Source: Octopus sinensis (lineage: Eukaryota). Taken from it: a stretch of DNA of 23,014 nucleotides. The stretch lies in assembly GCF_006345805.1 (NCBI RefSeq), contig NW_021836736.1, positions 1-23,014 of the forward strand. The letters run 5' to 3'. The notes beneath the pieces are model-generated. The model ran no database searches, was not told the DNA's origin, and saw only the letters and a list, made by a program, of their open reading frames with translations. Below, piece by piece: positions 2,785 through 23,014 of the stretch. Both the position numbers and the translations under genes were made by a program. Each line of letters opens with the position of its first letter. The stretch's first letter is position 1.

Positions 2785-3195
2785 ACTCTTTTACTCTTTT
2801 ACTCTTTTACTTGTTTCAGTCAGTTGACTGCGGCCATGCTGGAGCACCGCCTTTAGTCGAGCAAATCGACCCCGGGACTTATTCTTTGTAAGCCTAGTAC
2901 TTATTCTATCGGTCTCTTTTGCCGAACCGCTAAGTGACGGGGACATAAACACACCAGCATCGGTTGTCAAGCAATGCTAGGGGGACAAACACAGACACAC
3001 AAACATACATGCACACATATATATATATACATATATACGACGGGCTTCTTTCAGTTTCCGTCTACCAAATCCACTCACAAGGCTTTGGTCGGCCCGAGGC
3101 TATAGTAGAAGACACTTGCCCAAGGTGCCACGCAGTGGGACTGAACCCGGAACCATGTGGTTGGTAAGCAAGCCACTTACCACACAGTCACTCAT
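2784..3195 (-). mobile_element. Full-length CORE-like tRNA SINE (family C; octopus OR1/OR2-like)
   Basis: Minus strand has a head with B-box-like GGTTCAGTCCC, the CORE-like motif CCTTGGGCAAGT (3125-3114), an internal (TA)/(TG) microsatellite, and a tail ...CAGCATGGCCGCAGTCAACTGACTGAAACAAGT(AAAAGAGT)n. Near-identical copies are at 7708-8257 and 13646-14051. The OR1/OR2 name is from recollection. Confidence 0.88.
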
Positions 3196-3297
3196 ATACT
3201 GATATATATGTATCGAAACTGACTCATCATTATAGGGAATTCTCCACCGTTGCTTTTGGGTTTTTATGATCCCTGTCAGTATATATGTATAAAATTA

Positions 3298-3628
3298 TGT
3301 GCTTTGGGAAAGTGTCTTCTACAATAGCCTCGGGCCGATTAAAGCCTTGTGAGTAGATTTGGAAGTCGGAAACTGACAGAAGCCTGTCGCACATATATGT
3401 GTGTGTGTCTTTGTATCTGTGTTTGTTCACCCCCCGCCTCCCGCTCATTTGACAACCGATGTTGCTGAGTTTACCTCCCCATAACTTAACGGTTCGGTAA
3501 AAAAACCCCGATAGAATAAGTACTAGGCTTACAAAGAATAAGTCCTGGGGTCGATTTCTTCAACTAAAAGGCGGTGCTCCAGCATGGCCGCAGTCAAATG
3601 ACTGAAACAAGTAAAAGAATAAAAAGAC
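3298..3628 (+). mobile_element. CORE-like SINE (family C), head-truncated copy
   Basis: From TTGGGAAAGTGTCTTCTAC through GGCGGTGCTCCAGCATGGCCGCAGTCAAATGACTGAAACAAGTAAAAGAAT; inverted relative to 2784-3195. Confidence 0.88.
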
Positions 3629-4936: not shown

Positions 4937-7041
4937 GTATGTATGTATGTATGTATGTATGTATGTATGTATGTATGTATGTATGTATGTATACATGCTG
5001 TTCTGAATACATTTTTCAAATACCCTTCCATTAGACAAGAACTGGTCTCCAACCCAATGTTAGCTCCCTTTATTGGAATTTTGACAATAGCAACTACGTA
5101 TTTATGTTTGGAGGGATGTAACTATGTTACACATTGACATATGTATGCACGAGTGTGCCTGGGAATATTTTCTGAGGAACTCCTAACCTACTCTAATAAT
5201 ACTATCTGCTTAATGTAAGCAGAAATTATCCATGAATGCACCTCGTGGCTTGTTGGTTGCTGGGTGTTGCCGAAGGGATATGATGCTTCATTCAAAGGAT
5301 GTTTAAATCGATGTTAAGACTCTACCATGTTGTTTTCAATGTAGGTAAAGCTTGTCAATATCACTATTGATGTGGCGATTTCTGCTGGTAGTTAGTAGTT
5401 CCCGGGCTTTAACATTAATGGTCCAGATTCCATCTAAAATGTAGTCCAGCAGGCCAAGTACCAGTATAAATATTGGTACACAATATACATGAATGCCGTG
5501 CATAGAGCACTAAGAATCATACATTTTTCATCTGGGTGTTATGTCACGGGCTTTCATAGGACATATTTTCGTAGAAACAGTTGGGTTACTGATATATGTC
5601 GTTAGAGGTTCATTATTCGTATTAGTGGTTCATCGTTGTTCAACCTACGATGAGGGAACGTCTATCACGGCCAAACTTCATTCCGATGCTCTCTAACAAT
5701 GTCGTTTCTATATCAAATCCCATCTTCATATTGTTTATATTTTCGACATATACTTTTACATTATCCACAGGGAAGATGTATCTATCAATAAGCTGTTCTT
5801 ATAAACCAATCGCGTACTATTTTAGCGTTCCTCGACAAATAGAATAAGGTGTTCATTGTCTGGATAAACAGCGTAACAAGGAGACTGTCTCGAAATATGC
5901 TATCACACCACTGCCAGAACTGTATGATTGATTAAACTTTTGTCAGTACCTCATCAAACTCATTTCTCCCTCGCTGCTTATTCAGCTGAAATAGATTTTT
6001 TGTGTCATAGTCACAATGATCCTGGACGATTAGTGTAGATAAACTGCATAGATAAACTACATATATTAGATTCTGGCATGAAATTGCTGATTGCCATTTG
6101 AGTGGCTTTGTTCGTTTGTATCAGTATTATTTCTGCAAATACCAGCCAGATTGCTCTATTAGTATCTTCTCTGAGAGTTTGCTGATAGAAGCTGATAAGG
6201 TGTTGTCAATAAAAAGTAATTATTTGTACTGATTGCCAACAATCAAAACAATCAAACCTCTTTCTGGTGCTACCCAAAATCCTGACGTGTTTCTGTTATA
6301 ATTTCAAGTACGAGTATCAACATTGATACTATATAGTTTTAGTGCAACGTAGAGATAATCCTATCACACTCTTATACTGTGGGTTTTCATTAATACAGGG
6401 AGAATACATATTTCTTATTCACCCTGCATATAAACTCTTCTTTCTCTTGAATGAATCTGTATTCTCTCGGGAAATTGTCTCAGTGAAACTTTGTACCGTC
6501 CTCTCATCTTTTTGCAGCTTACTTTTTGATTTCAATTTCCTGCCTGTCAATTTCTTATAATGACAGTTTTTCACTGATAACTTTTAACTCTTGCTTAATG
6601 GTCATCAATTTGATTTCGAATGTCTCTTCTTGCTATCTCTAAACATATTTTGTGTTTTATGTTTCAATGTTTGTTGGAGAGAAATATATCTATTTGTGTG
6701 TTTACACTTGATATATACCACCTCATAGTTGATGGTCTTCCGTTGATGAAACAATCACTGAAGCAAAAAGTAATACGATTGATTTGCATCAGTTTATTTC
6801 TATATTATCTTCAAGATACTGCTTAACAGTTGTAGGAAGGCAATATAAACAAGAGGTTATTTGCCAGAATAATGACTCATTGCGTTTTTTTTCCAAATAT
6901 TCTCTATGTATATCTCTAATCACAGTCTGCATCAAATCTCTGGATCTCTTAGCGTTGATGAAATTTGGCCTCTCTCACATCCTTTGTATTAGCAACATAT
7001 CACTCTTCAATTAAAGCATTTCATTATCAATATCTATCAGA

Positions 7042-7460
7042 AGGCGGCGAGCTGGCAGAAACGTTAGCACGCCGGGCGAAATGCGTAGCCGTATTTCGTC
7101 TGCCGTTACGTTCTGAGTTCAAATTCCGCCGAGGTTGACTTTGCCTTTCATCCTTTCGGGATCGATTAAATAAATACCAGTTACGCACTGGGGTCGATAT
7201 AATCGACTTAATCCGTTTGTCTGTCCTTGTTTGTTCCCTCTTTGTTTAGCCCCTTGTGGGTAGTAAAGAAATAGGTATTTCGTCTGCCGCTACGTTCTGA
7301 GTTCAAATTCCACCTTTCATACTTTCGGGGTCGATTAAATAAGTACCAGTTATGCACTGGGGTCGATATAATCGACTTAATCCGTTTGTCTGTCCTTGTT
7401 TGTCCTCTCTGTGTTTAGCCCCTTGTTGGTAGTAAAAAAATGGGTATTTCGTCTGCCGTT
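7042..7460 (+). mobile_element. tRNA-derived SINE (family D) plus tandem head-less repeat units
   Basis: A-box-like TGGCAGAA (7053), B-box GAGTTCAAATTCC (7115-7127), central GCCTTTCATCCTTTCGGGATCGATTAAATAAATACCAG (Meta/MESC-domain-like from memory), tail AGCCCCTTGTGGGTAGTAAAGAAATA. GTATTTCGTCTGCCG recurs at 7091, 7275 and 7444. Confidence 0.85.
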
Positions 7461-7707
7461 GTTTGTAATTCTGTGCACAGTGGCTTACCTTAAGAAAAAA
7501 ACTGGTTTCTTTCCAAAGCACAATCAGGCAATCTCTACACATCTAGAGGAGACAGTCATATACTTCATCTCGATTCTTTTTCACTGACAGATTTAACGCT
7601 GTTTAACGGCGATAAACTGGATTCAAGTTCCTCTTTTTGCTAAATCGAAACATTTTTTTGTATTTAATTTCAACTTTTGTTAGTGAGAAGTGTTGCTATT
7701 TATTCTT

Positions 7708-8055: not shown

Positions 8056-8257
8056 TATATATATATTATATTATACATATATATATATACACGTATATAC
8101 GACGGGTTTCTTTTAGTTTCCGTCTACCAAATCCACTCACAAGTCTTTGGTCGGCCCGAGGCTATAGTAGAAGACACTTGCCCAAAGTGCCACGCAGTAG
8201 GACTGAACCCGGAACCATGTGGTTGGTAAGCAAGCTACTTACCACAAAGCCGCTCCT
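7708..8257 (-). mobile_element. Full-length CORE-like SINE (family C) with expanded internal microsatellite
   Basis: Near-identical to 2784-3195; the internal (CA)(CATA)(TA) tract is expanded to ~7915-8100. Confidence 0.9.
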
Positions 8258-8486
8258 ACGCCTCGATAAGCATTTCATCATAGGCGATAGGTCAACGACC
8301 TTCTTTGCAATGTACTGGAGTAAAAACAAACTGAGATTGAATTGCAGCTGTTATTTCTTTACGTTCAAGACACTACTACACAACAGACGATATAAACAAG
8401 CGCTGATTTGCCTAACTGATAAATCAAAAAATATCTCATAAAATCGCAAACAGATTTTAGTGTTCAAAAGTTCTGATGATCCCTCA

Positions 8487-8974: not shown

Positions 8975-10169
8975 TTGCCTCCTCCTCATTCCCCCACCAC
9001 CACCACCACTACGCCGTCATCGTCATCGTCGCCGCCATTACTCGTCATTGTCAATTTTAGTTTAGCAATGACAGCGATGAACACCCCCACCGCCGCCGCT
9101 GCCCGGTACCACCACCGCCATCACCATCACCATCACCATCACCATCACCACTACTATTACTACTGTTAACAACAAATAACACCATTATCTCAAGAAACAT
9201 CTCCTCTGAAGACTACCACCTTCACTATACTCAATAAAACAGTCACCATCATCATATTCATCATTAATATCTCATTCTCTTCTCCTCATTTTCCTCTTCC
9301 TTATAATTCTCTTTCCCCTCCTCTTCCTCCTCCTCCTCCTCCTCCTCATCATCATCATCATCTTCATCATATTTCATCACCATCATTATCATGAGGATCA
9401 GTTTCGTCTTGGAGTTCATTGTCATCTTCATAGTTCTTACCATTCCGTATCTTTTCATCTTCTTCATCCTCCTTTTCATGAACCCCATCATCGCTGTCAT
9501 CGTCACCGCCACCACCGTCGACGTCGTCGTCCTCCTCCTCCTCTTCCTCTTCCCCACTCTCCTCCTCTTCCTCCTCCTCATTCTCATCCCCTTCCTCCTC
9601 CTCATTCTCATCCCCTTCCTCCTCCTCCTCTTCTCTCAGCACCATCAGCAACATGATCATTGACACCAGCCTCCTCCAACCCTCGCCCTCTTCTTCTACT
9701 CCTCCCCTTCCTCTTCAGCCTCCTCTTCCTCATCCTCTTCTCTCAGCACCATCACCAACACGATCATTGACACCAGCCTCCTCCTCCTACCCTCACCCTC
9801 TTCTTCTCCTCCACTCCCTCTTCCCCCTCCTCTTTCCCCTCCTCTTCCTCATCTCTCAACACCACCAACACGATCATTGACACCAGTCTCATGCTCCCCC
9901 TCCTCCCTCCTCCTCTCATGATCATCACAATCCTCCTCCCTCCTTCCTCCTCCTCATCATCATTCATCGCCACCACCATCTTTATCTCTGTTATCATTGA
10001 CGATGTGAGTATGTCATCAACTTCTCAATATCATTACAGCCTCAACTACATAGAAGATTATATTTTTATTCTCATACTTCTATTAATTTTCATTTCATTG
10101 ATTTTGCTGCTGTTATTATCATTATTGTTATTATTATTATTATCATCATTATTGTTATTATTATTATTA

Positions 10170-10221
<52 letters not shown>

Positions 10222-10230
10222 TGCTGCTGT
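8975..10230. repeat. Trinucleotide low-complexity field (CAC/CAT/CCT, ending in (TTA)n)
   Basis: Directly visible; contains three copies of GATCATTGACACCAG (9655, 9762, 9872). Confidence 0.9.
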
Positions 10231-10499
10231 ATTCCATATTATTCATATGTTTTTTTTTTAAAATTATTTAGTTCTTTGTGAATTTTTTTTTTCTTTCATT
10301 TCATATTTTTTTTCTTCTTCCACCATTACAATTCAAAATGAAGTATTCGCTATTGCAGTTGAAGCCATCCACCGTTTTTCAATATCAATTTTGTTGATGT
10401 TCTTCACCTAATTCATCATGGCTGCCAAAGAAAAATAGTCCATTGATAATTAAATTTCATCGCGGTTCAGAAGTTGGACATTTTTTTTTTCTTTTAAGA

Positions 10500-11095
10500 T
10501 AAAGAGAGAACGAAAGGGACCGAGAGCGAGAGAGAATAAGAGAGGTGGAGGAAGAGAAAGAAGGAGCATGACAAATAAAAGCAGACAAAGAGTAAAAGAA
10601 AGATTAAAGAGAGAAGAAAAAGAAAGAAGAGAAGTAAGAAAAAGGTAGAGAGAGAGAGAGGGAGCGAGAGAAAAAAGAGAGAATAAGAGAGAGATGGTGG
10701 GAGAGAATGAGAGAGAGAAAGAGAGAATAAAAGAGATGGAGGGAGAGAAAGAGAGAGAGAGAATAAGAGAGATGGAGGGGAGAAAGAGAGAATAAGAGAG
10801 ATGGAGGGAAACAAAGAGAGAGAGAGAGAGAGAGAAAGAGAGAATAAGAAGGAAAGAGAGAGAAAAAGAGAAAGAGAAAGAGAAAATAAGAAGGAGAGAG
10901 AGAGAGAGAGCATGACAGAAATAAAGACAGACAAAGAGCAAAAGAAAGATTAAAGAGCGAAAAAAAAGAAAGAGAAGGAAGAAAAGGCAGAGTGAGAGAG
11001 AGAGAGAGGGAAGAAGAGAGGGAGAGAGAGTGAGAAAAAGAGGCAGAGAGACAGGAAGGCAGAAAGAAAGATACAGACAAGGCTAAAAAGAGATT
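10500..11095. repeat. Polypurine (GA-rich) tract with internal minisatellite
   Basis: Almost all A/G on the + strand; GAGAATAAGAGAGATGGAGG-like units recur; GCATGACA...CAGACAAAGAG...AAAGAAAGATTAAAGAG is duplicated at 10566 and 10910. Confidence 0.9.
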
Positions 11096-11189
11096 TAGCT
11101 CATTTACATTTTTTTTTGCTTGTTGCTTTTTGGAGAGGTTTTTTTTTGTTTTATATCTTTCTTCGTTTCCTTCTTCTTGTCGTTATCGC

Positions 11190-11213
11190 TGTCATCATTG
11201 CAGTCGTCATATG

Positions 11214-11244
<31 letters not shown>

Positions 11245-11313
11245 CTTCTCCTTCTTCTCCAACTTCTTCATCTTACTATTGATATAACAACAATGGCAAC
11301 ACCACCACCAAAG

Positions 11314-11351
<38 letters not shown>

Positions 11352-11418
11352 TATTATTATTATTATTAATAATAATAATAATAATATTCGCATCATCATC
11401 AGCATTATTATCATCATC

Positions 11419-11452
<34 letters not shown>

Positions 11453-11960
11453 TGACCATCATCATCATCATCATCATCATGACCATCCTCCTCCTCCTCC
11501 TCCTCACCATCATCATTATCATCATTATCTTCATCACCATCATCATTGTCGTTGTCGTCGATGTCATCATCCTCCTCCTCCTCCTCATCATCATCATCAT
11601 CACCATCATCCTTATCATCATCATTGTCGTTGTCGTCGATGTCATCATCATCCGCATCATCATCACCACCATCCTCCTCCTCATCATCATCATAATCATT
11701 GTCGTCGTCGTCAGTATTCGTTTTCTTCCCCCTCCTCCTTATCATCATCATCAACGTCATCGTAATCCTCATCCTCCCCCTCCTCCTCCTCCTCCTCATC
11801 ATCATCTCATGGACGTCGTTATTATGAATTTCTTTTATAGTGTCTTTATTGTTGTTGTATTAATATCATAGTTGATATTATTGTCGATGTTGCTATCAAT
11901 ATTATTATCAGTATTATTAAGTTGTTCTTAATGTTATTGTTGTTGTTGTTGTTGTCGATG
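11190..11960. repeat. Trinucleotide field (CGT, TTA/TAA, CAT, CCT, TTG)
   Basis: Directly visible; CATTGTCGTTGTCGTCGATGTCATCATC is duplicated ~78 bp apart. Confidence 0.9.
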
Positions 11961-12196: not shown

Positions 12197-12353
12197 TGCC
12201 CACTTCACACACGCACAACACTAGCACAGCCCTACACGCATACACTCAGAGAACTCAGACATGCTCACACGTACATACATTACATACATTCATTTATACG
12301 TACACATACGAATACACAATATATGCGTACATACATATAATATCCGTGCGTAA

Positions 12354-12479: not shown

Positions 12480-13091
12480 ATCTATCTATCTATCTCTCTC
12501 TTCTCTATCTATCTATCTATATATATATATATATCTATTTATCTATCAATTTATCTCTCTACACACACACAAACACACACACATATATATATACGTATAT
12601 GCATACATTGCAGATGCACATCCAAAAGCACCTAGCCCCGGAGTTACAATCAAATAAATACACACATTTGTATGTACGTGAGTGCGTATGTATGTATATG
12701 TATGTATGCATATATGTTTGTATGTATGTATGTATGTATGTATGTATGTATGTATGTATGTATGTATGTATGTATGTATGTAGTATGTATGTATGTATGT
12801 ATGTATGTGTGTATGTGTGTATGTATGTGTGTAGTATGTATGTAGTATGGTGTATGTATGTGGTATGTATGTATGTATGTATGTATGTATGTATGGTGTA
12901 TATGTATGAATGTATGTATGTATGTATGTAGGTATGTGGTGTAGTTGATGTAGTATGTATGTATGTATGTAGTATGTATGTATGTATGTAGGTGTATGTA
13001 TGTGTGTATGTATGTATGTATGTTGCATGTATGTATGTGGTATGTATGTATGTGTGTATGTATGTATGTATGTATGTATGTATGTATGTAT
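12087..13091. repeat. Microsatellite field: (CA)n, (TG)n, (TATC)n, long degenerate (TATG)n
   Basis: (CA)n ~12087-12195, (TATC)n ~12436-12545, (TATG)n ~12715-13091. Confidence 0.95.
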
Positions 13092-13645: not shown

Positions 13646-14051
13646 TACTCTTTTACTCTTTTACTCGTTTCAGTCATTTGACTGTGGCTATGCTGGAGCA
13701 CCGCATTTAGTCAAGCACATCGACCCAGGACTTATTCTTTGTAAGCCTAGTACTTATTCTATCGGTCTCTTTTGCCGAACCTCTAAGTTATGGAGACGTA
13801 AACACACCAGCATCGGTTGTCAAGCGAAGTTGGGGGCGACAAACACAGACACCAAGATATACACACACATACATATATATATATATACATATATACGACG
13901 GGCTTCTTTCAGTTTCCGTCTACCAAATCCACTCACAAAGCTTTGGTTGGTCCGAGGCTATAGTAGAAGACACTTGCCAAGGTGCCATGCATGAGACTGA
14001 ACCCGGAAACATGTAGTTCGTAAGCAAGCTACTAACCACACAGCCACTCCT
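13646..14051 (-). mobile_element. Full-length CORE-like SINE (family C), more diverged copy
   Basis: Colinear with 2784-3195 from the (TACTCTTT)n tail to the ACCACACAGCCACTCCT head. Confidence 0.88.
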
Positions 14052-14281
14052 TGCTAAATCTTTCTTGCATGTCTTTCGATTTTCCCTGAATTGGAGTTTC
14101 TTAAATGACCTTTATCACAGGGATATCCTTTCCTGGTTTGTTAAATTTAATAACAAACGTCTTACTTCCATCTCTGTCGTACTAAATCACGCCGCTTTAT
14201 CTCTTCTGTTTTGTGTATATCTGATTCATTTTCTATTTCTCGTTTTCCCTGCCACCCCTAGCACTCTCCTTCCCATTCTGA

Positions 14282-14282
<1 letters not shown>

Positions 14283-14362
<80 letters not shown>
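14283..14362. repeat. (TATC)20 at the 5' junction of the Tx1-type LINE
   Basis: Perfect tetranucleotide run. Confidence 0.95.
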
Positions 14363-14365
<3 letters not shown>

Positions 14366-14462
14366 TCTATTATCTACACAAAATTTTGCCCCTTGTGGGC
14401 AAAATTTAAAAGAAAAAATTCTCATAGCCTTCGTGGTTTCATTTAGCCATTTTATTTCCAAA

Positions 14463-16558
14463 ATGGCCACGGTCACCACGAGGCTGAGGTGCAAGTCAAG
14501 CGTGACGCAGAGACAGAAAACAGGATGCTCTGTAGCATACGCTGAACCTGACAACAACACACCTCCACCACATCAACACCGACAACAGCCAACAAATACA
14601 AAACAAAGGTCGCAAGGCCAAGCACCGTCAACACCATCAGTGAGTCCACCACCAACACCGCAACACAACACCATGGCAGAATCTGCTACTAAAACTGCTA
14701 TCCCTGCTAAGACATCGCCACCAATAACAATACCAACATCACCATCACCGCCACCAAAGACCGTGCCGTCAATGCTACTAATACCACTAACACCCGCCGT
14801 CACCAAGAACGACACACAATAAACAACAAAAACAACAACAACACAACGACGACGACAACAACATTCCCTTCAACCACTGCTCACTCCATCACCAAGTGAA
14901 GAAATAACGACGACAAGCAAACGAAATGCCGAAATTTGCGCTAATGCAGGACTAAATTACGCAGGCAATTTTCCACCCCTTGCTAGTTGCATAATCAGCA
15001 ACCACAAACCTACAACCCACACCCTGCCATCAACACCAAACCACACCGGCCAGTAACAACAATAACAAAACAACAACAAACTTCGCCGATGCGATAAAGA
15101 AAAGGTAACAAAAGTTTGTTTACTACACAACAGATTAAAGATTGCAGAAACCTTATTACAAATGAAAACGGAAAAATACTCTTACACATACCTCAAGACA
15201 TACTGAATGAGGAGGAAAAAAAAGACAATTGTATATAAAATCACAAATAAAAAAACTAAAAGTCCAGAAAAGGCAAGCACAGACAAAGTCGAAAAGTGCT
15301 TACGCCCCATCTGGGGATACAAGGATTATGTGACTTGGGCGAACAAGTTCGCCCACGTACAGGTGGTTTTTTCAGAATGAAGAGTTGGAAGAAGAAATCT
15401 CAACGATAACCCTTCATTCTGATGAACTAACGATGACACCGAGTTCCTCGGCCAGAAGGTGACGAAGGTCATTATCAGTGGTGTCCCCCAAGTGACTACA
15501 CACTGTGGATAACATCCGCCGTACATCCGAAATGGAGGACTTAAACATCCTAGATATCGGTGTTCGAAAAACAAGGACTGGCTGGGAAAGAGAATAGAGT
15601 TCCTCTTCCACATAAGTCAAGACGACATAATAAAAATCCCCACCCACGTACATCTTGAGGATGCCCAAGTTATACGTAGTAGTCGAGGGCAGAAGGCCAC
15701 GATGCTATACATGTGGCAGTGAGGCACACCTCAAAAAGGAGTGCAATCTGCCGCGCAAATTACAACAACAACAGCCACATGAAAAATCACAAAAGCCAGC
15801 ATTATTGCCCACACACCAATATGACAGCTAGTCAAGAAGCTGTATGCGGAAATGCAGGAAAAACAACAAAGAACAAGCAACCCAACCAAACAACACCAAC
15901 ACCAGCGCCAAGAACAGAATCATCACCACCAACAACAAATAAACCAATTCCAACACCAAGAATAACAACGAAGAGACAAGCACCAAGGATGTAGGAGAGA
16001 CAATAACCACAACGAACCCCCAGCAACACCCTCCCCGCGCACCACAACAATATCTACAACCGCACAAACACACCCAGACGCTTTACCCCTGCCCCCTGCT
16101 GATTCGTCAGACTTTTCATCTAACGATGAAAGTTCGACAGGTGGCAAATAGCCACAGGGGTAAAAGAAAAAGATCAAGAAAAACCAAACAAGAAATCGCA
16201 ACCAAAGCAGGGAGATACCTGAACCCTGAAAACTCCATACACCAACAAAACAAGCACCAAACCACAAAAACAATGCTATCAGCGATAGACACCAAAGACT
16301 CCAAACTAATGGAGTACATCACAGGATACACAAACATTTGTGAAGATGACTTTAAAAATAGCAATCATCCACGCACTACACCACCCAAACACATCAAAAT
16401 ACTACACATCACACAAACACAACACCACAAACTCAAAGCCCTCTTCCCAAATGCTGTGGGGGGTTTCCAGAAATATCTATCCCAAAAACTACTATAAAAA
16501 CCTCCTCGAAGACACATCAAAGAACGAGGAAGCCAAAACTTTCGACACAAGTAAGTAA
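14463..16558 (+). pseudogene. Tx1-type ORF1 (gag-like nucleic-acid-binding protein), frameshifted
   Basis: ATG at 14463 (MATVTTRLR) and a long Thr/Pro/Asn-rich region. VVEGRRPR-CYTCGSEAHLKKEC contains a CX2CX4HX4C knuckle at 15703-15744. The last frame ends ...EEAKTFDTSK* at 16558. Confidence 0.8.
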
Positions 16559-16608
16559 CTCTCTGTACTTTCATTTTTGTGTTTTAAAGCACACACCCCA
16601 ATAGAATC

Positions 16609-19600
16609 ATGGTCAAGATTGGTTGTGTGAATGTGCGTGGCTTGGGGTCTCCTTGGAAACAAGGATATCTCCTAAATGATATCAAGTCATGATTTGGGAA
16701 TCATAGCCATAAGTGAGACCAGACTCCACGAGCCACGGGCCCTAAAGTCCATGTTTGGCGGACAGTTTAACATTATTTCGCTCCCTGTCTGCCGAGGATG
16801 GGCGGTAGTGGCACCGCGGTACTTTTTCACAAGAGCCTGGATCGAAGTCAAGACGATATTCGTAGACCCGGAGGGTAGACTGGTCGTTCTGGATGTTGAC
16901 GGCAGCAATGGGTGCGCTTTTCGACTCGTATCAGTCTACGCACCGCACTAAAAGGTCGGGCGGATTTCTTTCGACGTCTAGAAGTATCTTGGGAACGTCT
17001 CGTCCTTTACTCTTAGTGGGGGATTGGAATGCTACCTTGGACACGCATGTGATACGTGGGTACGTGGTAGAGACAGAAACAGAAGGGGATGCAAATGCCT
17101 CAGAGACCTGCTCAGACGATTCCAACTGTCTGACAGGTACCGACTCGACCACCCAATGCACCAACGTGGACATGGAGCAACCGCAGTGGTCGTCGAGATC
17201 GTATCTAGATAGGATACTGTGTAGGACAGTAGACAAGGATAACTTAGGATGTCCACAATTCCACACAGTCAGCTACACGGATCACAAATTGGTGACGTGT
17301 ACGCTAGACTTAGATAAGGCACATAGACAGGGTCCTGGGTACTGGAAACTGAACGCATCATTCCCGTCCAGACAAGTTTTCAGAGACCGGATTAGCACAC
17401 TAGTAAAGAGGGCTTTGACGGGAGCCATCATCAACAACAAATGGTGGTTTGCCCTCAAAGAGCAGTAAAAGCAGAAGCGATTAGGTACAGCAAAGCATTA
17501 GCCATAGATAGAATAGAGAGTAGAGGGTGAGCTAGTTAAGAAGCTAGAAGAGGCAATTAGAAGCGGCATCGCATCCGACGTTTTGGCGGCGAGGTTGGCC
17601 CTCGACCACCACTTCAACGCCAACACGAAGGATGTGCTGTCAGAGCTAGGATGCGTGCTCTAAGGAACGAAGGTGTTGGAGCCGCGAGAGAGGCCCGGTG
17701 GCAGAGGCGCAACAGGGCAACAAAGCCACCATTCGGTCACTGGTAGTAGATGAACAGGGGCGCGAATTGCTCGAGCCAAGTAAAATGTGTGAGGCCTTTC
17801 AGGCATTTTGCCCGACTGTTCGGACGAGTGGAGGCACAAGAACGTAGGGTGGACTTCAGTGCCTACCTACATAGCCTACCACGACTCTCGACAAGAAAGG
17901 CAGGGTGCTGCGAAGGTGCCATCACGGCAGGCGGAAGTGCGGGAAGCGATGGCAGAATGCTCGAGGGACAAATAACCGGGTTTGGATGGTCTACCCTACG
18001 AGCTTTACAATTGTATGCCAGACTTGTTTGGAGATCTCTTGGCGGCGGTGTGTACTGCAACTGGCAGCAAAACGGGAGCATTCCTGGTTTTGTGAGCCGA
18101 GGAACCGTAACACTGTGAAGAAAGATCTAAACAAGGGAAATGTAATAGATAACTTTAGGCCCCATCTCTGCTAATGCAGACTTGAAAATTTTGGCCAAGG
18201 TGCTAGCCAAGAGGTTGGCGCTTGTCATCGAGAAACTGGTCGAACGGCGCAAAACATGCGCCGTGCCAGGCCGGACCATCCATGACAACCTCCATCTGAT
18301 GCGCTACATCATAGACAGGGTAGTTAACGAACCTGGCATGGGTGGGGCCCTGATCAAATTGGATCAATCAAAGCCTTGATAGGGTAGATCATCGATACTT
18401 GGAGGCAGTCCTGAGAGCGGCTGGTTTCGGTCCCGTCTTCCGCGGCTGGATAGCTGCCTTGTACAGAGGCATCCGTTCGGTAATTCGCGTAAATGGACAT
18501 CTATCGAGACCTTTCGACATTGCACGTTCGGTCCGTCAGGGATGGCCCCTCTCGGCGCTTCTATACGTATTGACTCTTGAGCCACTACTGCGGAAGCTGG
18601 CGACTCTAAGGGGCATCCCGCGAGAATTGGGATGCGGGACGAGCGTGTCTGCATACGCGGACGACGTCACCGTCATAGTGTCAAGCCACGAGCACATCGA
18701 GGGGTCGGCGAGACACTGAAAGACTACGAAGCGCGGTGACAGGAGCAAAAATCAACCGGGAAAAGTCAGTGGGCTTGCGGCTCGGCACCTGGAGAAGCAA
18801 GCCCATGCCGTCCACCAGTACCTCCGTCGTGGGACGCTGGACAGACGGCCCGGTTGAGTTGCTCGGGGTCTGGTTCGGTCTGGACCTCCAAATGGAGAAG
18901 AACTGGAACGAGATAACGAGTAGGGTGGTCACTCTCGCCCAGCAATGGGCCGAGAGGAAACTGTCCCTAAAAGGTCGGGCGGAGGTGGTGAACGCGTACA
19001 TCGCGTCCATCATCTACTACCGCCTGACCGTCGTACCTTGTCCCGACCCTACCATCACCAAACTAGAACGCATCCTCTACCGCTTCTTGTGGAAAGGATG
19101 CGTCCCGATGGTCAGGCGATCCATTTGCTGTCAACCACCCGTTAAAAGGAGGGCTGGGCATGCCGTGGTTGATGATGCGCAGACACGCGCTGAGACTGCG
19201 ACATCTCCGGCTCTATGTAGACGACGGTGAACAGGTGTGGTCGCCGTTGTGAGGTACGCATTCCCGCAATCGTCTCCATGACCGAACTACAGTCGTGGAT
19301 CAAAAAGAGGCCGATAAAGGCGAATGGCACCGCGAGTGTCGCGTTGCTCTCAAGCAACTCTGCCGTCCCGGGTCGACCTTGAGTGACTTCAACACAACCA
19401 AAGCATTCTATAGGGGATTAGTGGAGGGGAGGTACGACGACGAGCTCGGGGCAAACCTGGGCGTCGACGAGGAATACCTGACCCGCCTGTTTCAAAACGA
19501 CTTTCGGCCCGGGACCTATGGACAACTTCCAGAGATCCCTGGCCTGGCGGTGCTACCGAGAAGCGCTACCCGTTCGGGATAAGCTCTATAGGCATGGCTC

Positions 19601-20039
19601 GAGAAACACGGGGCCGACCTGCCCGAGATGCGGGCAGAGCGACGAAACCGCTCTGCACGCACTCGTGCAGTGTCCAGCAATTTCCCACCTGTGGGCTTAT
19701 GTCGAACGACTGCTGTCACGTGTGGGACGTGTCGGTTTATCAGCCGAGTCTATCGTTAATATCGTCACACCTCCTTCCTTCAAACGGGAAGGAAGAGCTA
19801 TTTTTATCATACTTGTGGCTATGGCGAAAGAATGTATCTGGTGGACGCGCCTGAAAGGATTAGAGACAAACACTTTCCTCTCTGGTCAATCTCCCATCAA
19901 CTTCTTCAAGTATCACTTGAAGAAAAAAGTGAGAGTAGAGAGGCAAGTTTTGTCTAGTGAATGTTTTAAAAAAAGATGGGTGAATGTAGCAAGGATGGCA
20001 CGTATGAATGACGAAGCCACCTTGACTATGATTCTATGA
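16609..20039 (+). pseudogene. Tx1-type ORF2 (APE endonuclease, reverse transcriptase, C-terminal zinc finger), frameshifted
   Basis: APE motifs: MVKIGCVNVRGL, AISETRL, VGDWN, SYLDRIL, YTDHKLV, followed by GPGYWKLNAS. RT motifs: GLDGLPYELY, KILAKVLAKRL, PGRTIHDNL, VRQGWPLSALLYVLTLEPL, AYADDV, GAKINREKS. Downstream: LSLKGRAEVVN and CPRCGQSDETALHALVQC; stop at 20037-20039. Confidence 0.92.
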
Positions 20040-20415
20040 ACCGTAAAAATTAATACAGAGAGTTGCTTATTTGCAAAAAAAAAAATAAAAAATAAGAAAT
20101 ATAACATGTGACTTCATTGACCGAGGTTACTGTGGTCTTTTCCGTAGGCTTTTCTTTCCACGGGTAAACCTCATCTGTCCTCCCCTTTACACTTCATATT
20201 GACATTTCTGTGATAACGATCCATATTGATCAATTTTTTTTCCTCTCCCCCTTTTTTTTTCACCCCCCCTTTTTTTGTCCTCTTTCTCTCCTTTTACGAT
20301 CCCTTTTGATCGACCCCCCCTTTTTTTAATTTTTATTTTTATTTTTTATTTTTTTTACCTTCAAAAGAAAAGCTTTACCTTGTAATTTGTTCTATCTGTG
20401 TGCAGCCCTGTGTGG

Positions 20416-20421
20416 AATAAA
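20416..20421 (+). promoter_or_regulatory. Polyadenylation signal of the Tx1 element (also at 20985 and 21681 in the truncated copies)
   Basis: AATAAA lies 6 nt before the element end in all three copies. Confidence 0.6.
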
Positions 20422-20448
20422 GAAACATATCTATCTATCTATCTATCT

Positions 20449-20892
20449 GAGCTATTTTTCATCATCTCTTGTGGCTATGGCTAAGGAATGTATCTTGTGG
20501 ACGCGTCTGAAAGGATTGGAGACAACCCTTTCCTCTCTGGTTCAATCTCTCTCAACTTCTTCAAGTACCACTTGAAAAGGAAAGTGAGAGTAGAGAGGCA
20601 AGTTTTGTCTAGCGAATGTTTTAAAAAAAGATGGGTGATGTACAAGAATGGCACGTATGAATGACGAAGCCACCTTGAGCATAGTCCTATGAACCCAGAA
20701 ATCGAAAACAGAAGTTGCTTATTTGCAAAAAAAAAAAAAAAAAATAAGAATATAAATGTGACTTCATTGACCGAGGTTACCGTGGTCTTTTCGCAGGCTT
20801 TCTTTCCACGGTAAACCTCACCTGTCCTCCCCTTTACACTTCATATTGACATTTCTGTGATAACGATCCCTATTGATCATTTTTTTTCCCTC

Positions 20893-20924
<32 letters not shown>

Positions 20925-20996
20925 TTAATACCTTCAAAAGAAAAGCTCTACCTTGTAATTTGTCTCTGTGGCAGCCTGGTGGCTAATAAAGAAACA
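20449..20996 (+). mobile_element. 5'-truncated Tx1 copy 2
   Basis: Colinear with the long copy from position 19795 to its end; preceded by (TATC)5 (20428-20447) and followed by (TATC)12 (20997-21044). Confidence 0.92.
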
Positions 20997-21046
<50 letters not shown>

Positions 21047-21053
21047 CTATATG

Positions 21054-21692
21054 CACGTGTGGGACGATCCGGTTTATCAGCCTAGTCTATCATCAATATT
21101 GTCACGCCTTCTTCCTTCAAACGGGAAGGAAGAGCTATTTTCATCATTCTTGTGGATATGGCGAAAGAATGTATCTGGTGGACGCGTCTGAAAGGATTGG
21201 AGACAAACACTTTCCTCTCTGGTCAATCTCTCATCAACCTCTTCAAGTATCACTTGAAAAGGAATATGAGAGTAGGGAGGCAAGTTTTATCTAGTGAATG
21301 TTTCAAAAAAAGATGGGTGAAAGTAGCAAGGATGGCACATATGAATGACGAAGCCACCTTGAGCATAATCCTATGAACTCGGAAAATTTAAAACAGAGGG
21401 TTACTTACTTGCAAACAAATGTGTTAACATGTGACATTATTAACCGAGGTTACCGTGGTCTTTTCCGTAGGCTTTTCTTTCCACGGATAAACCTTATCTA
21501 CTTCCCCCTTTACACTTTACATCATAACATTTCTGTGATACACGATCCCTATTGATCGTTTTTTTCTTTCCCTTTTACGATCCCTTTTGATCGAAAACCT
21601 ACCCCACTTTCTTTTTCTCTCCCCAAAAAGAAAAGCTCTACTTTGTAATTTGTCCCGTCTGTGTGCAGCCATGTGTGGCTAATAAAGAAACA
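21054..21692 (+). mobile_element. 5'-truncated Tx1 copy 3
   Basis: Colinear with the long copy from position 19717; ORF end ...MAKECIWWTRLKGLETNTF...ATLSIIL* (21152-21376); followed by CATC(TATC)17. Confidence 0.92.
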
Positions 21693-21693
21693 C

Positions 21694-21776
<83 letters not shown>

Positions 21777-22896: not shown

Positions 22897-23014
22897 AGGA
22901 GTGGCTGTGTGTGGTAAGTAGCTTGCTTACCTACCATATTGTACCAGGTTCGGTCCTACTGCGTGGCATCTTGGGCAAGTGTCTTCTACTATAGACTCGG
23001 GCCGATCAAAGCCT
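22897..23014 (+). mobile_element. CORE-like SINE (family C), 5' part, cut by the window edge
   Basis: AGGAGTGGCTGTGTGTGGTAAGTAGCTTGCTTACC...CTTGGGCAAGTGTCTTCTACTATAG matches the family head. Confidence 0.88.

What the first reader, a model, noticed from the sequence alone, without database searches (positions are those of the whole stretch)
7042..7460. SINE family D shares its 3' tail with the Tx1 LINE: candidate SINE-LINE partnership
Seen: SINE unit 2 TTTGTCCTCTCTGTGTTTAGCC (from ~7399) versus Tx1 copy 3 TTTGTCCCGTCTGTGTGCAGCC gives 18/22 ungapped matches. SINE unit 1 AGCCCCTTGTGGGTAGTAAAGAAATA versus Tx1 copy 3 AGCCATGTGTGGCTAATAAAGAAACA gives 20/26. The similarity covers ~45 nt and stops at both elements' 3' ends. 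Known: stringent-type SINEs carry the 3' tail of their partner LINE (typically L2, CR1 or RTE), while L1-group partners with shared tails are uncommon. Inference: this SINE is mobilised by this or a related Tx1 family. The sequence just before the SINE head is TATCTATC (7031-7038), which is only weakly suggestive of the same target.
Basis: partly seen in the sequence, partly recalled or inferred. Interest (0 to 1): 0.75.

Follow-up and report, generated by a model that had tools for sequence, protein, structure and literature searches.

The report
Octopus SINE shares LINE 3' tail
A short parasitic repeat (SINE) in this octopus DNA ends in the same ~45-base tail as an L1/Tx1-type LINE 13 kb away, and the same pairing, much closer, is seen in the paper nautilus Argonauta, so the SINE very probably borrows that LINE lineage's copying enzyme; it is a well-supported new example of a known kind of partnership.

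Summary
The SINE tail (7224-7272 and 7393-7441) matches the 3' ends of three LINE copies (20379-20426, 20952-20995, 21643-21691) at 32/42 ungapped. No shuffle out of 5000 reached the score, and the LINE tails are the SINE's best non-self hits in the window.

Independent support comes from an Argonauta hians locus. Its SINE consensus tail and a LINE 3' end of the same lineage agree at 46/52, and three insertions there have 10-15 bp target-site duplications. Profiles built from SINE tails alone recover LINE tails (E down to 6e-9), and the reverse also holds.

The LINE has an APE endonuclease, an RT and a zf-RVT motif, and a relative's best solved-structure match is human L1 ORF2p. It therefore belongs to the L1 superfamily. 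Tx1 membership is inferred from mollusc LINE surveys and from head-to-tail copies in one (TATC)n array; no phylogeny was run.

The tails fall into two types. SINE D carries the CCCTTGTGG type, whereas the window's LINE copies carry CAGCC..GGCTAA, so the true partner is probably a sister subfamily.

Trans-mobilisation is inferred, not shown. I found no published octopus SINE-LINE pairing. This is a new member of a known kind, of moderate interest.

The parts
7031..7038 (.). TATCTATC just upstream of the SINE head, the same unit as the LINE-flanking microsatellite
   Evidence: Read directly. No matching downstream duplicate was found, so it is suggestive only.
7040..7275 (+). SINE D unit 1, full length: head with a B-box-like GAGTTCAAATTCC (7113-7125), body, and 3' tail
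   Evidence: The body and tail are homologous to at least 6 Argonauta SINE copies (blastn E down to 1e-19). An O. bimaculoides UniProt ORF (P0121) is a reverse-strand translation of the same family.
7224..7272 (+). Tail of unit 1, CCTTGTTTGTTCCCTCTTTGTTTAGCCCCTTGTGGGTAGTAAAGAAAT, shared with the LINE
   Evidence: nhmmer tail profile E=9.5e-10; LINE-only profile E=2.6e-4; 0/5000 shuffles.
7276..7444 (+). SINE D unit 2, beginning at SINE position ~53 (TATTTCGTCTGCC), 93% identical to unit 1, with a 15-nt deletion
   Evidence: TRF period 169; global alignment 154/165.
7393..7441 (+). Tail of unit 2
   Evidence: nhmmer E=8e-8; LINE-only profile E=0.02.
7445..7461 (+). 17-nt third start of the SINE unit (TATTTCGTCTGCCGTTG)
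   Evidence: blastn 17/17.
7462..7502 (+). Possible degraded LINE-type tail (TTTGTAATTCTGTG...AAGAAAAAAA) abutting the SINE array
   Evidence: 13/14 match to the Argonauta LINE t2 (8/2000 shuffles), but p~0.06-0.09 against the window's LINE tails, and the profile does not find it. Weak.
14282..14376 (.). (CTAT)n microsatellite upstream of the full-length LINE, preceded by unique DNA
14380..14416 (+). Tail-core fragment TTTTGCCCCTTGTGGGCAAAATTTAAAAGAAAAAAT between (CTAT)n and the LINE 5' end. Its core is the SINE D-type tail core, and it forms an 11-bp hairpin.
   Evidence: 15/16 to the SINE unit 1 tail, 0/2000 shuffles; fold z=-3.7; profile E~0.1 across all the DNA held.
14417..20430 (+). LINE copy 1, near full length and decayed. 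ORF2 remnants at 16609-20039 are spread over three frames with several stops.
   Evidence: Pfam hits: Exo_endo_phos (E=0.0017, below the curated cut-off), RVT_1 7e-10, zf-RVT 6e-9. Frame map. Homologues in Argonauta, cuttlefish and other cephalopod-derived contigs.
20379..20426 (+). Tail of LINE copy 1, followed by (TATC)n at 20427-20448
20449..20999 (+). LINE copy 2, 5'-truncated, 89.6% identical to copy 1; tail at 20952-20995, followed by (TATC)n to ~21047
21054..21697 (+). LINE copy 3, 5'-truncated, 85.6% identical to copy 1; tail at 21643-21691, followed by (ATCT)n at 21694-21773

Best explanation
SINE D is a non-autonomous retroposon whose last ~45 nt (core: TCTGTGT..GCC(C)CTTGTGG(G/C)T A(A/G)TAAAGAAAT) descend from the 3' end of an octopod L1-superfamily LINE lineage, most likely of the Tx1 clade.

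Inferred mechanism: the LINE's ORF2 protein (APE endonuclease plus reverse transcriptase) recognises this specific tail on its own RNA and, in trans, on SINE RNA. This is 'stringent' recognition; no poly(A) is involved. The protein nicks the target and primes reverse transcription there, helped by a few bases of microhomology between the RNA end (..AAATCTAT in Argonauta) and TAT-rich target DNA. The result is 10-15 bp target-site duplications.

The same machinery often lands on or next to existing tails, or switches templates between tail-bearing RNAs. That would explain the head-to-tail arrays of both LINE copies and SINE units.

The partner of SINE D in Octopus is probably a sister subfamily with a CCCTTGTGG-type tail, not the three decayed CAGCC..GGCTAA-type copies in this window.

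What is shown: the tail homology, its terminal position, its co-variation between two genera, the TSDs, and the LINE's domain architecture. What is inferred: trans-mobilisation, the recognition element, and the Tx1 assignment.
For: (1) The window match is 32/42 ungapped, at both 3' ends. No shuffle out of 5000 reached the score, and the LINE tails are the SINE's best non-self hits.

(2) In Argonauta hians locus L002, the LINE homologue P0003 is 59% identical to the window's ORF2. Its 3' UTR ends, and those of an adjacent 5'-truncated copy, carry the tail (12245-12283 and 12603-12649). At least 8 SINE copies of two body types carry it too. The SINEa consensus matches LINE t2 at 46/52 and SINEb at 35/38.

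(3) Cross-validation. The SINE-only profile finds LINE tails at E=6e-9 (L002), 4e-6, 3e-4 and 1.5e-3 (window) and 2.7e-5 (L003). The LINE-only profile finds SINE tails at 2e-6 to 2.6e-4. All hits examined are SINE or LINE 3' ends, apart from the fragment at 14385-14402; two weaker L002 hits were not inspected. The search covered 124 kb on both strands.

(4) A third octopod-derived LINE copy (L003) ends GGGCCCTTGTGGCCAATAAAAGAAATC. Decapodiform relatives (L010, a cuttlefish; L011) keep TCGGCCTTGTGCC...CAATAAATAAT at the 3' UTR end. The motif is therefore old in the LINE lineage, which points to LINE-to-SINE transfer.

(5) Retroposition signatures in Argonauta: TSDs CTATTTCAAGGAA (13 nt) and ATTATCTTTnTGCC. 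In addition, a 470-nt composite of several SINE units is flanked by a single 15-nt TSD.

(6) Shared insertion habit. LINE copies 1-3 lie head to tail in one (TATC)n array. SINE units lie head to tail in the window and in L002 (15059 then 15309; a tail followed by copy 1477). A SINE-D-type tail core (14380-14416) sits inside the same (CTAT)n array as the LINE.

(7) LINE class. Pfam finds APE, RVT_1 and zf-RVT. The relative P0020 best matches human L1 ORF2p (E=1e-74, against R2 at 1e-21; R1 and TRAS endonucleases are absent from the list). In tree-based mollusc LINE surveys the L1 superfamily is represented by Tx1 (PMC10294476), and octopus annotations list L1-Tx1 (PMC13282606, PMC8967140).
Against: Only one SINE D locus is available from Octopus. 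It has no detectable TSD, and its 3' side is a tandem array of unclear origin.

Its tail is only 73-76% identical to the LINE copies in the window, and the last bases differ (..AAATAGG against ..AAACATATC). It is not followed by (TATC)n.

The head gives no tRNA hit with ARAGORN or Rfam.

A conserved tail hairpin is only weakly supported: a 4-bp consensus stem with one covarying pair, and fold z-scores mostly between -0.2 and -2.9.

Target specificity of the LINE rests on one array. The Argonauta LINE ends are not in microsatellites, and L003 is followed by (ATT)n.

No RT phylogeny with Tx1 and L1 reference sequences could be made. No other octopod LINE clade (RTE, CR1, Dong-R4) could be screened for a better tail match.
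Confidence: 0.75

Rival explanations
1. Relic tail. SINE D, or its ancestor, once took its tail from this LINE lineage, but was amplified in Octopus by another LINE or by relaxed recognition, so the similarity is historical only.
For: SINE D's tail is 24-27% diverged from the window's LINE tails, and the extreme 3' bases differ. No TSD or (TATC)n is present at the SINE's 3' side. Octopus genomes hold very active RTE, CR1 and Dong-R4 LINEs (PMC13282606, PMC9115989).
Against: In Argonauta the SINE and LINE tails are nearly identical (46/52), which implies ongoing co-evolution rather than a frozen relic. SINE D is closer to the type II LINE tails (25/30), so a better-matching Octopus subfamily is expected. 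A SINE-D-type tail core lies in the LINE's own (CTAT)n array.
Confidence: 0.12
2. The LINE is not Tx1. It is an L1-clade (or other L1-group) element whose (TATC)n is simply its own slippage-generated 3' repeat, so the pair is an 'L1-group stringent' pair rather than a Tx1 pair.
For: No phylogeny was run. The Argonauta LINE ends are not in microsatellites. L003 is followed by a different repeat, (ATT)n. Non-LTR elements are known sources of microsatellites (PMC3812793).
Against: A 95-bp (CTAT)n also lies upstream of the full-length copy, preceded by unique DNA. Three independent copies are nested head to tail, and relatives in L011 are tandem, which is the habit of site-specific elements. [quoted passage not shown] Tree-based mollusc surveys find Tx1 as the L1-superfamily clade (PMC10294476).
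Confidence: 0.15
3. The 'LINE tails' are SINE 3' fragments that happened to insert at LINE ends, or LINEs captured a SINE tail, so no dependence follows.
For: Tail-only fragments and insertions next to existing tails do occur (L002 1476-1461; window 14380-14416).
Against: Every LINE 3' end examined, six copies from three sources, carries the tail at the end of a contiguous 3' UTR homologous between copies. More distant decapodiform relatives, in whose loci no SINE-type tail was found, keep a related terminal motif.
Confidence: 0.04
4. Chance resemblance of two T/G-rich then A-rich low-complexity ends.
For: The block is short and compositionally biased. Unit 2 versus the damaged copy 2 is not significant (697/5000).
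Against: 0/5000 dinucleotide shuffles for unit 1 versus copies 1 and 3. Reciprocal profile hits down to E=6e-9 land on SINE or LINE 3' ends wherever I examined them. The pairing is replicated in a second genus.
Confidence: 0.01

Closest known systems
Stringent-type SINE/LINE pairs with a common 3' tail (Ohshima et al. 1996; Kajikawa & Okada 2002, UnaSINE1/UnaL2; reviewed in PMC3747384)
   Same: The terminal ~40-50 nt are shared between a short pol III-type retroposon and an autonomous LINE of the same genome. There is no poly(A). TSDs are present. The tail co-varies with the LINE between lineages.
   Different: The usual partners are L2, CR1, RTE and similar clades; here the partner is an L1-superfamily (probably Tx1) element. 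A recognition stem-loop is only weakly indicated. Nothing has been tested experimentally.
Monocot L1 lineage with a conserved structured 3' end shared with maize and sorghum SINEs (PMC3472496, PMC3747384)
   Same: An L1-group LINE that keeps a specific 3' sequence also found on SINEs, that is, stringent recognition inside the L1 group.
   Different: Those are plants and L1 proper. No microsatellite or tandem context is involved, and the motifs are unrelated.
Crocodilian SINEU mobilised by Tx1-Mar LINEs (Kojima 2015, PMC4494074)
   Same: A SINE is attributed to a Tx1-clade partner, and SINE and LINE share insertion habits.
   Different: That case rests on a shared target (Mariner-N4_AMi) and shared snRNA-derived 5' heads, not on a shared 3' tail. 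SINEU heads are U1/U2-derived.
Microsatellite-specific Tx1 elements Kibi (TC)n and Koshi (TTC)n, and crocodilian (TTCC)n/(TTTC)n Tx1 families (Kojima & Fujiwara 2004, cited in PMC4494074)
   Same: APE-type L1-group LINEs found head to tail inside a simple repeat.
   Different: The repeat unit here is (TATC)n, with (ATT)n for a relative. Specificity is seen at one array only, and it is not evident in Argonauta.
Octopus SINEs OK, OR1 and OR2 (Ohshima & Okada 1994), and the 'tRNA-Core / tRNA-Deu / unclassified' octopus SINEs of recent annotations (PMC8967140, PMC13282606)
   Same: Abundant octopod-specific short retroposons. SINE D is present in O. bimaculoides (P0121).
   Different: I could not obtain those consensus sequences, so identity with any named family is untested. 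Published labels carry no LINE-partner suffix.

Membership tests
SINE/LINE pair with common 3' tail (stringent type) | Significant sequence similarity between the SINE and a LINE of the same genome | tested here: met
   32/42, 0/5000 shuffles. Reciprocal profiles E=6e-9 to 2.6e-4. Argonauta 46/52.
SINE/LINE pair with common 3' tail (stringent type) | The similarity lies at the extreme 3' end of both elements | tested here: met
   It ends 2-4 nt before the end of the SINE units and before the post-LINE repeat. In Argonauta it runs to the TSD.
SINE/LINE pair with common 3' tail (stringent type) | SINE copies are retroposed (flanked by TSDs, multiple dispersed copies) | tested here: met
   Three TSDs of 10-15 nt in L002 and at least 8 copies in 22 kb. 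For the window's own locus no TSD was found.
SINE/LINE pair with common 3' tail (stringent type) | SINE head derived from a pol III gene (tRNA, 5S or 7SL) with an internal promoter | tested here: inconclusive
   B-box-like GAGTTCAAATTCC (Argonauta GTTCGAATCC), but no ARAGORN or Rfam tRNA hit.
SINE/LINE pair with common 3' tail (stringent type) | The LINE's RT mobilises the SINE in trans, dependent on the tail | not testable with these tools
   Needs a retrotransposition assay.
SINE/LINE pair with common 3' tail (stringent type) | Conserved 3' stem-loop serving as the recognition element | tested here: inconclusive
   RNAalifold finds only a 4-bp apical stem with one compensatory pair. Single-sequence z-scores range from -0.2 to -2.9.
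L1 superfamily of non-LTR retrotransposons | N-terminal APE endonuclease, RT, and a C-terminal Cys/His motif; RT closest to L1 | tested here: met
   Pfam on the window copy and its relatives. P0020 against PDB: L1 ORF2p at 1e-74 over APE+RT, R2 at 1e-21.
Tx1 clade | RT-domain phylogeny places the element with Tx1 references rather than L1 proper | not tested
Inferred from mollusc surveys in which the L1 superfamily is represented by Tx1 (PMC10294476, PMC13282606).
Tx1 clade | Sequence-specific insertion giving head-to-tail copies in the target repeat | tested here: inconclusive
   Three copies in one (TATC)n array with (CTAT)n on the 5' side. Relatives are tandem in L011. However, the Argonauta copies are not in microsatellites, and L003 sits in (ATT)n.
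CORE-SINE superfamily | Central ~60-nt CORE domain shared with MIR | tested here: inconclusive
The reference may be imperfect.

The most novel reading that the evidence does not exclude
A large share of the octopod-specific SINE expansion (SINEs make up ~11-12% of the O. vulgaris genome, mostly 'unclassified') is driven by Tx1-type LINEs that recognise a specific ~45-nt tail. These LINEs preferentially re-integrate at existing tails or at TAT(C)-like sites, and switch templates between tail-bearing RNAs. The outcome would be composite SINE arrays and seeded tetranucleotide microsatellites. This would be a stringent, self-targeting mode so far undescribed for the L1/Tx1 group in animals.
Probability: 0.3. 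Interest if true: 0.6.

Novelty: new member of a known kind. Interest (0 to 1): 0.45.

Why it matters
SINEs are the signature repeat of octopus genomes, yet published annotations leave most of them unclassified and name no LINE partner. Attention has gone to an RTE element expressed in the brain. A tail-sharing partner in the L1/Tx1 group would name a driver for at least some of these SINE families.

It would also add an animal example of stringent 3'-end recognition within the L1 group, which is otherwise known mainly for relaxed poly(A) recognition. And it offers a conserved ~45-nt element whose role can be tested directly.

It does not change the general picture of how SINEs move.

Tried and rejected
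(1) I tried to collect more Octopus copies. Exact-pattern scans of metagenome, GTDB genome and viral contigs with a degenerate SINE body pattern gave 0 hits. A protein-guided metagenome scan with the LINE C-terminus returned only distant 32% matches. A search with the SINE's reverse-strand peptide found one O. bimaculoides UniProt ORF, which has no contig on record. The window's own LINE ORF is not on record either. A genome-wide Octopus consensus could therefore not be built.

(2) I tested for a tRNA origin of the head. ARAGORN and Rfam, at both gathering and permissive thresholds, were negative in the window and in Argonauta.

(3) CORE/MIR similarity was not significant.

(4) Covariation in the tail hairpin was too weak to claim.

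(5) No TSD was found for the window SINE array under any of four candidate 3' ends.

(6) The contigs L001, L004, L009 and L012 end before the LINE tail. L008 is a distant relative with no octopod SINEs.

(7) A Tx1-versus-L1 phylogeny could not be run for lack of reference sequences. The supplement of PMC4494074 is not held. The PDB entry 'LTX' is an engineered L1 endonuclease chimera (my recollection of the deposit, not checked here), not Tx1.

(8) The idea that 7462-7502 is a LINE-type tail remains below significance against the window's own LINE.

Full report
WHAT THE WINDOW IS. The 23-kb window is microsatellite-rich animal DNA. The closest relatives of its LINE protein come from octopods and other cephalopods: Argonauta hians at 59% identity, Acanthosepion pharaonis, and unlabelled contigs at 66%. 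The SINE's reverse-strand translation is 81% identical to an Octopus bimaculoides UniProt ORF. The source is therefore an Octopus-like octopod.

THE OBSERVATION. The region 7040-7461 holds one full SINE unit (7040-7275). It is followed head to tail by a second unit (7276-7444) that begins at SINE position ~53, is 93% identical and has a 15-nt deletion. A 17-nt third start follows at 7445-7461.

They join into one ungapped block of 32/42 against LINE copy 3, with a gapped equivalent against copy 1. The block ends a few bases before the end of each element.

In a blastn of the SINE against the whole window, the LINE tails are the best non-self hits (E=0.003 and 0.03). Against dinucleotide-preserving shuffles the score is 34 versus 14.5 +/- 2.5. 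No shuffle out of 5000 reached it for unit 1 versus copies 1 and 3, and 1-6 of 5000 did for unit 2 versus copies 1 and 3. Against the damaged copy 2, 18 of 5000 reached it for unit 1, and unit 2 is not significant (697 of 5000).

THE LINE. From about 14417 to 20430 lies a decayed, near full-length non-LTR element. ORF2 remnants run from 16609 to 20039 across three frames with several stops. Pfam gives a sub-threshold Exo_endo_phos hit, RVT_1 (7e-10) and zf-RVT (6e-9).

Intact relatives have all three domains. One of them, P0020, best matches human L1 ORF2p among solved structures: 1e-74 over endonuclease plus RT, against 1e-21 for R2. No R1 or TRAS endonuclease appears in the list.

Copy 1 is flanked by (CTAT)n (14282-14376, itself preceded by unique DNA) and by (TATC)n. 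Two 5'-truncated copies follow head to tail, each separated by (TATC)n: 20449-20999 at 89.6% identity and 21054-21697 at 85.6%.

The element is thus L1-superfamily. [quoted passage not shown] A tree-based survey of mollusc LINEs lists Tx1 as the L1-superfamily clade (PMC10294476). Octopus annotations list L1-Tx1 (PMC13282606, PMC8967140).

INDEPENDENT EVIDENCE FROM ANOTHER GENUS. The 22-kb Argonauta hians locus L002 around homologue P0003 contains two LINE 3' ends. One is the end of the ORF-bearing copy (tail t1, 12245-12283). The other belongs to an adjacent copy consisting only of the 3' UTR (tail t2, 12603-12649).

The same locus holds at least eight SINE copies. Their body from the B box onward is homologous to SINE D, or their 3' module is ('SINEb'). 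The Argonauta SINEa consensus and LINE t2 agree at 46/52 over the terminal ~50 nt, and SINEb and t2 at 35/38.

Profiles built only from SINE tails recover LINE tails: L002 at 6e-9; the window at 4e-6, 3e-4 and 1.5e-3; and L003, from an unidentified octopod-derived contig, at 2.7e-5. Profiles built only from LINE tails recover SINE tails. Every hit I examined is a SINE or LINE 3' end, apart from the fragment at 14385-14402; two weaker L002 hits were not inspected. The search space was 124 kb on both strands.

This removes chance as an explanation. It also shows that the SINE and LINE tails change together between genera, as expected if the LINE enzyme selects on them.

TWO TAIL TYPES. The LINE tails fall into a CAGCC-NNGT-GGCTAA type (window copies 1-3 and Argonauta t1) and a GGCC-CTTGT-GGCY type (Argonauta t2 and L003). 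All SINE tails are of the second type.

SINE D is closer to Argonauta t2 (25/30) than to the LINE copies of its own window (22/30 over the same bases). The real partner in Octopus is therefore probably a sister subfamily not represented by a LINE body in this window.

A possible trace of that subfamily is the 37-nt fragment at 14380-14416. It lies between (CTAT)n and the 5' end of LINE copy 1. Its core, TTTTGCCCCTTGTGGG, matches the SINE D tail at 15/16 (0/2000 shuffles), and it folds into an 11-bp hairpin (z=-3.7).

More distant decapodiform relatives (cuttlefish L010 and L011) end their 3' UTRs with TCGGCCTTGTGCC...CAATAAATAAT. This suggests the motif is ancient in the LINE lineage and passed from LINE to SINE.

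MECHANISTIC CLUES. Argonauta SINE insertions have TSDs of 10-15 nt that begin with (C)TAT/ATT and overlap the element's terminal ..AAATCTAT. This fits priming by microhomology at a TAT-rich nick site.

Elements cluster at each other's tails. A full SINE starts immediately after another's tail (L002 15059 then 15309). An insertion with its own TSD lies 14 nt after a tail (13886 then 13620). A 470-nt composite of several SINE pieces joined at tails is flanked by a single 15-nt TSD (L002 1929-1460), the signature of template switching in one event.

The head-to-tail LINE copies, the SINE D array in the window and the tandem full-length relatives in L011 fit the same habit.

A recognition hairpin is plausible: an apical 4-bp stem with a G-C to C-G exchange in Octopus SINE D, and a lower UCUGUGU/AAUAAAGA pairing in several folds. 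It is statistically weak with the few sequences at hand.

WHAT REMAINS OPEN. Only one Octopus SINE D locus was available, and all attempts to fetch more failed. That locus has no TSD, and its tandem structure is unexplained. The head has a B-box-like motif but no detectable tRNA homology. CORE-SINE membership was not supported. Other octopod LINE clades could not be screened for a better match. Trans-mobilisation is inferred only.

COMPARISON AND NOVELTY. The arrangement works like the classical stringent SINE/LINE pairs with a common tail (PMC3747384). Partners from the L1 group are uncommon. The closest precedents are a monocot L1 lineage whose structured 3' end is shared with SINEs (PMC3472496) and crocodilian SINEU with Tx1-Mar, a case argued from shared targets and heads rather than tails (PMC4494074).

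Full-text searches found no description of an octopus SINE-LINE partner. A review of 58 tail-sharing pairs does not mention octopus. Recent octopus repeat papers label SINEs as tRNA-Core, tRNA-Deu or unclassified, with no LINE suffix. A study of bivalve SINE partners does not mention Tx1. Repbase and Dfam could not be consulted.

I rate this a new member of a known kind: solidly supported as homology, probable as a functional partnership, and of moderate interest.

Noticed in passing
window 14380-14416: TTTTGCCCCTTGTGGGCAAAATTTAAAAGAAAAAAT forms a perfect 11-bp hairpin and carries the SINE D-type tail core. It is wedged between (CTAT)n and the 5' end of the full-length LINE. It is either a tail-only insertion or a 5' motif of the LINE.
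   Followed up: partly
window 7462-7502: Directly after the SINE array comes TTTGTAATTCTGTGCACAGTGGCTTACCTTAAGAAAAAAA, which resembles a LINE-type tail (GTAATTCTGTG, as in Argonauta LINE t2). The resemblance is statistically marginal.
   Followed up: partly
window 7092-7461: Units 2 and 3 of the SINE both restart at the same internal position (TATTTCGTCTGCC). Unequal crossing-over, or repeated template switching at a fixed reverse-transcription stop in the head, could both give this. It is unresolved.
   Followed up: partly
window 2784-~3010 (-) and 7700-~7905 (-): A different SINE family (..GGGGTCGATTTGCTCGACTAAAGGCGGTGCTCCAGCATGGCCGCAGTCA..) ends in (AAAGAGTA)n. This 8-nt repeat tail is unlike the LINE tail studied here, so it probably has another partner.
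   Followed up: no
window 3040-3196 (-), 8100-8258 (-), 13871-14054 (-), 3302-3422 (+), 22908-23014 (+): A further tRNA-like SINE family (GGTTCCGGGTTCAGTCC...) whose ends run into (TA)n/(GTAT)n microsatellites. The tail profile does not match it.
   Followed up: no
window ~9000-11900 (- strand): Long low-complexity reading frames rich in Asp, Glu and His (for example 11104-11805), with strong GC skew. Whether this is an exon or just trinucleotide repeats is unknown.
   Followed up: no
L002 1929-1460 (-): In Argonauta, a 470-nt composite of SINEb pieces, a 5'-truncated SINEa and a 16-nt tail-only piece is bounded by a single 15-nt duplication, ATTTTCATTACAAA(A)G. Several tail-bearing RNAs were apparently copied in one insertion event.
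   Followed up: partly
L003 1971-2105; window 20427-20448, 21000-21047, 21694-21773: The same LINE tail is followed by (ATT)n in one relative and by (TATC)n here. Subfamilies may use, or generate, different microsatellites.
   Followed up: no
L011 348-6180, 7895-13712, 15977-: Full-length decapodiform relatives of the LINE lie head to tail with a ~7.5-kb period. Their 3' UTR end (and that of cuttlefish L010) reads TCGGCCTTGTGCCACATTTGTAC..CAATAAATAAT.
   Followed up: partly
protein P0005: A protein named as from a Herbaspirillum MAG is 56% identical to this cephalopod LINE ORF2. This is almost certainly host DNA contaminating a bacterial bin.
   Followed up: no
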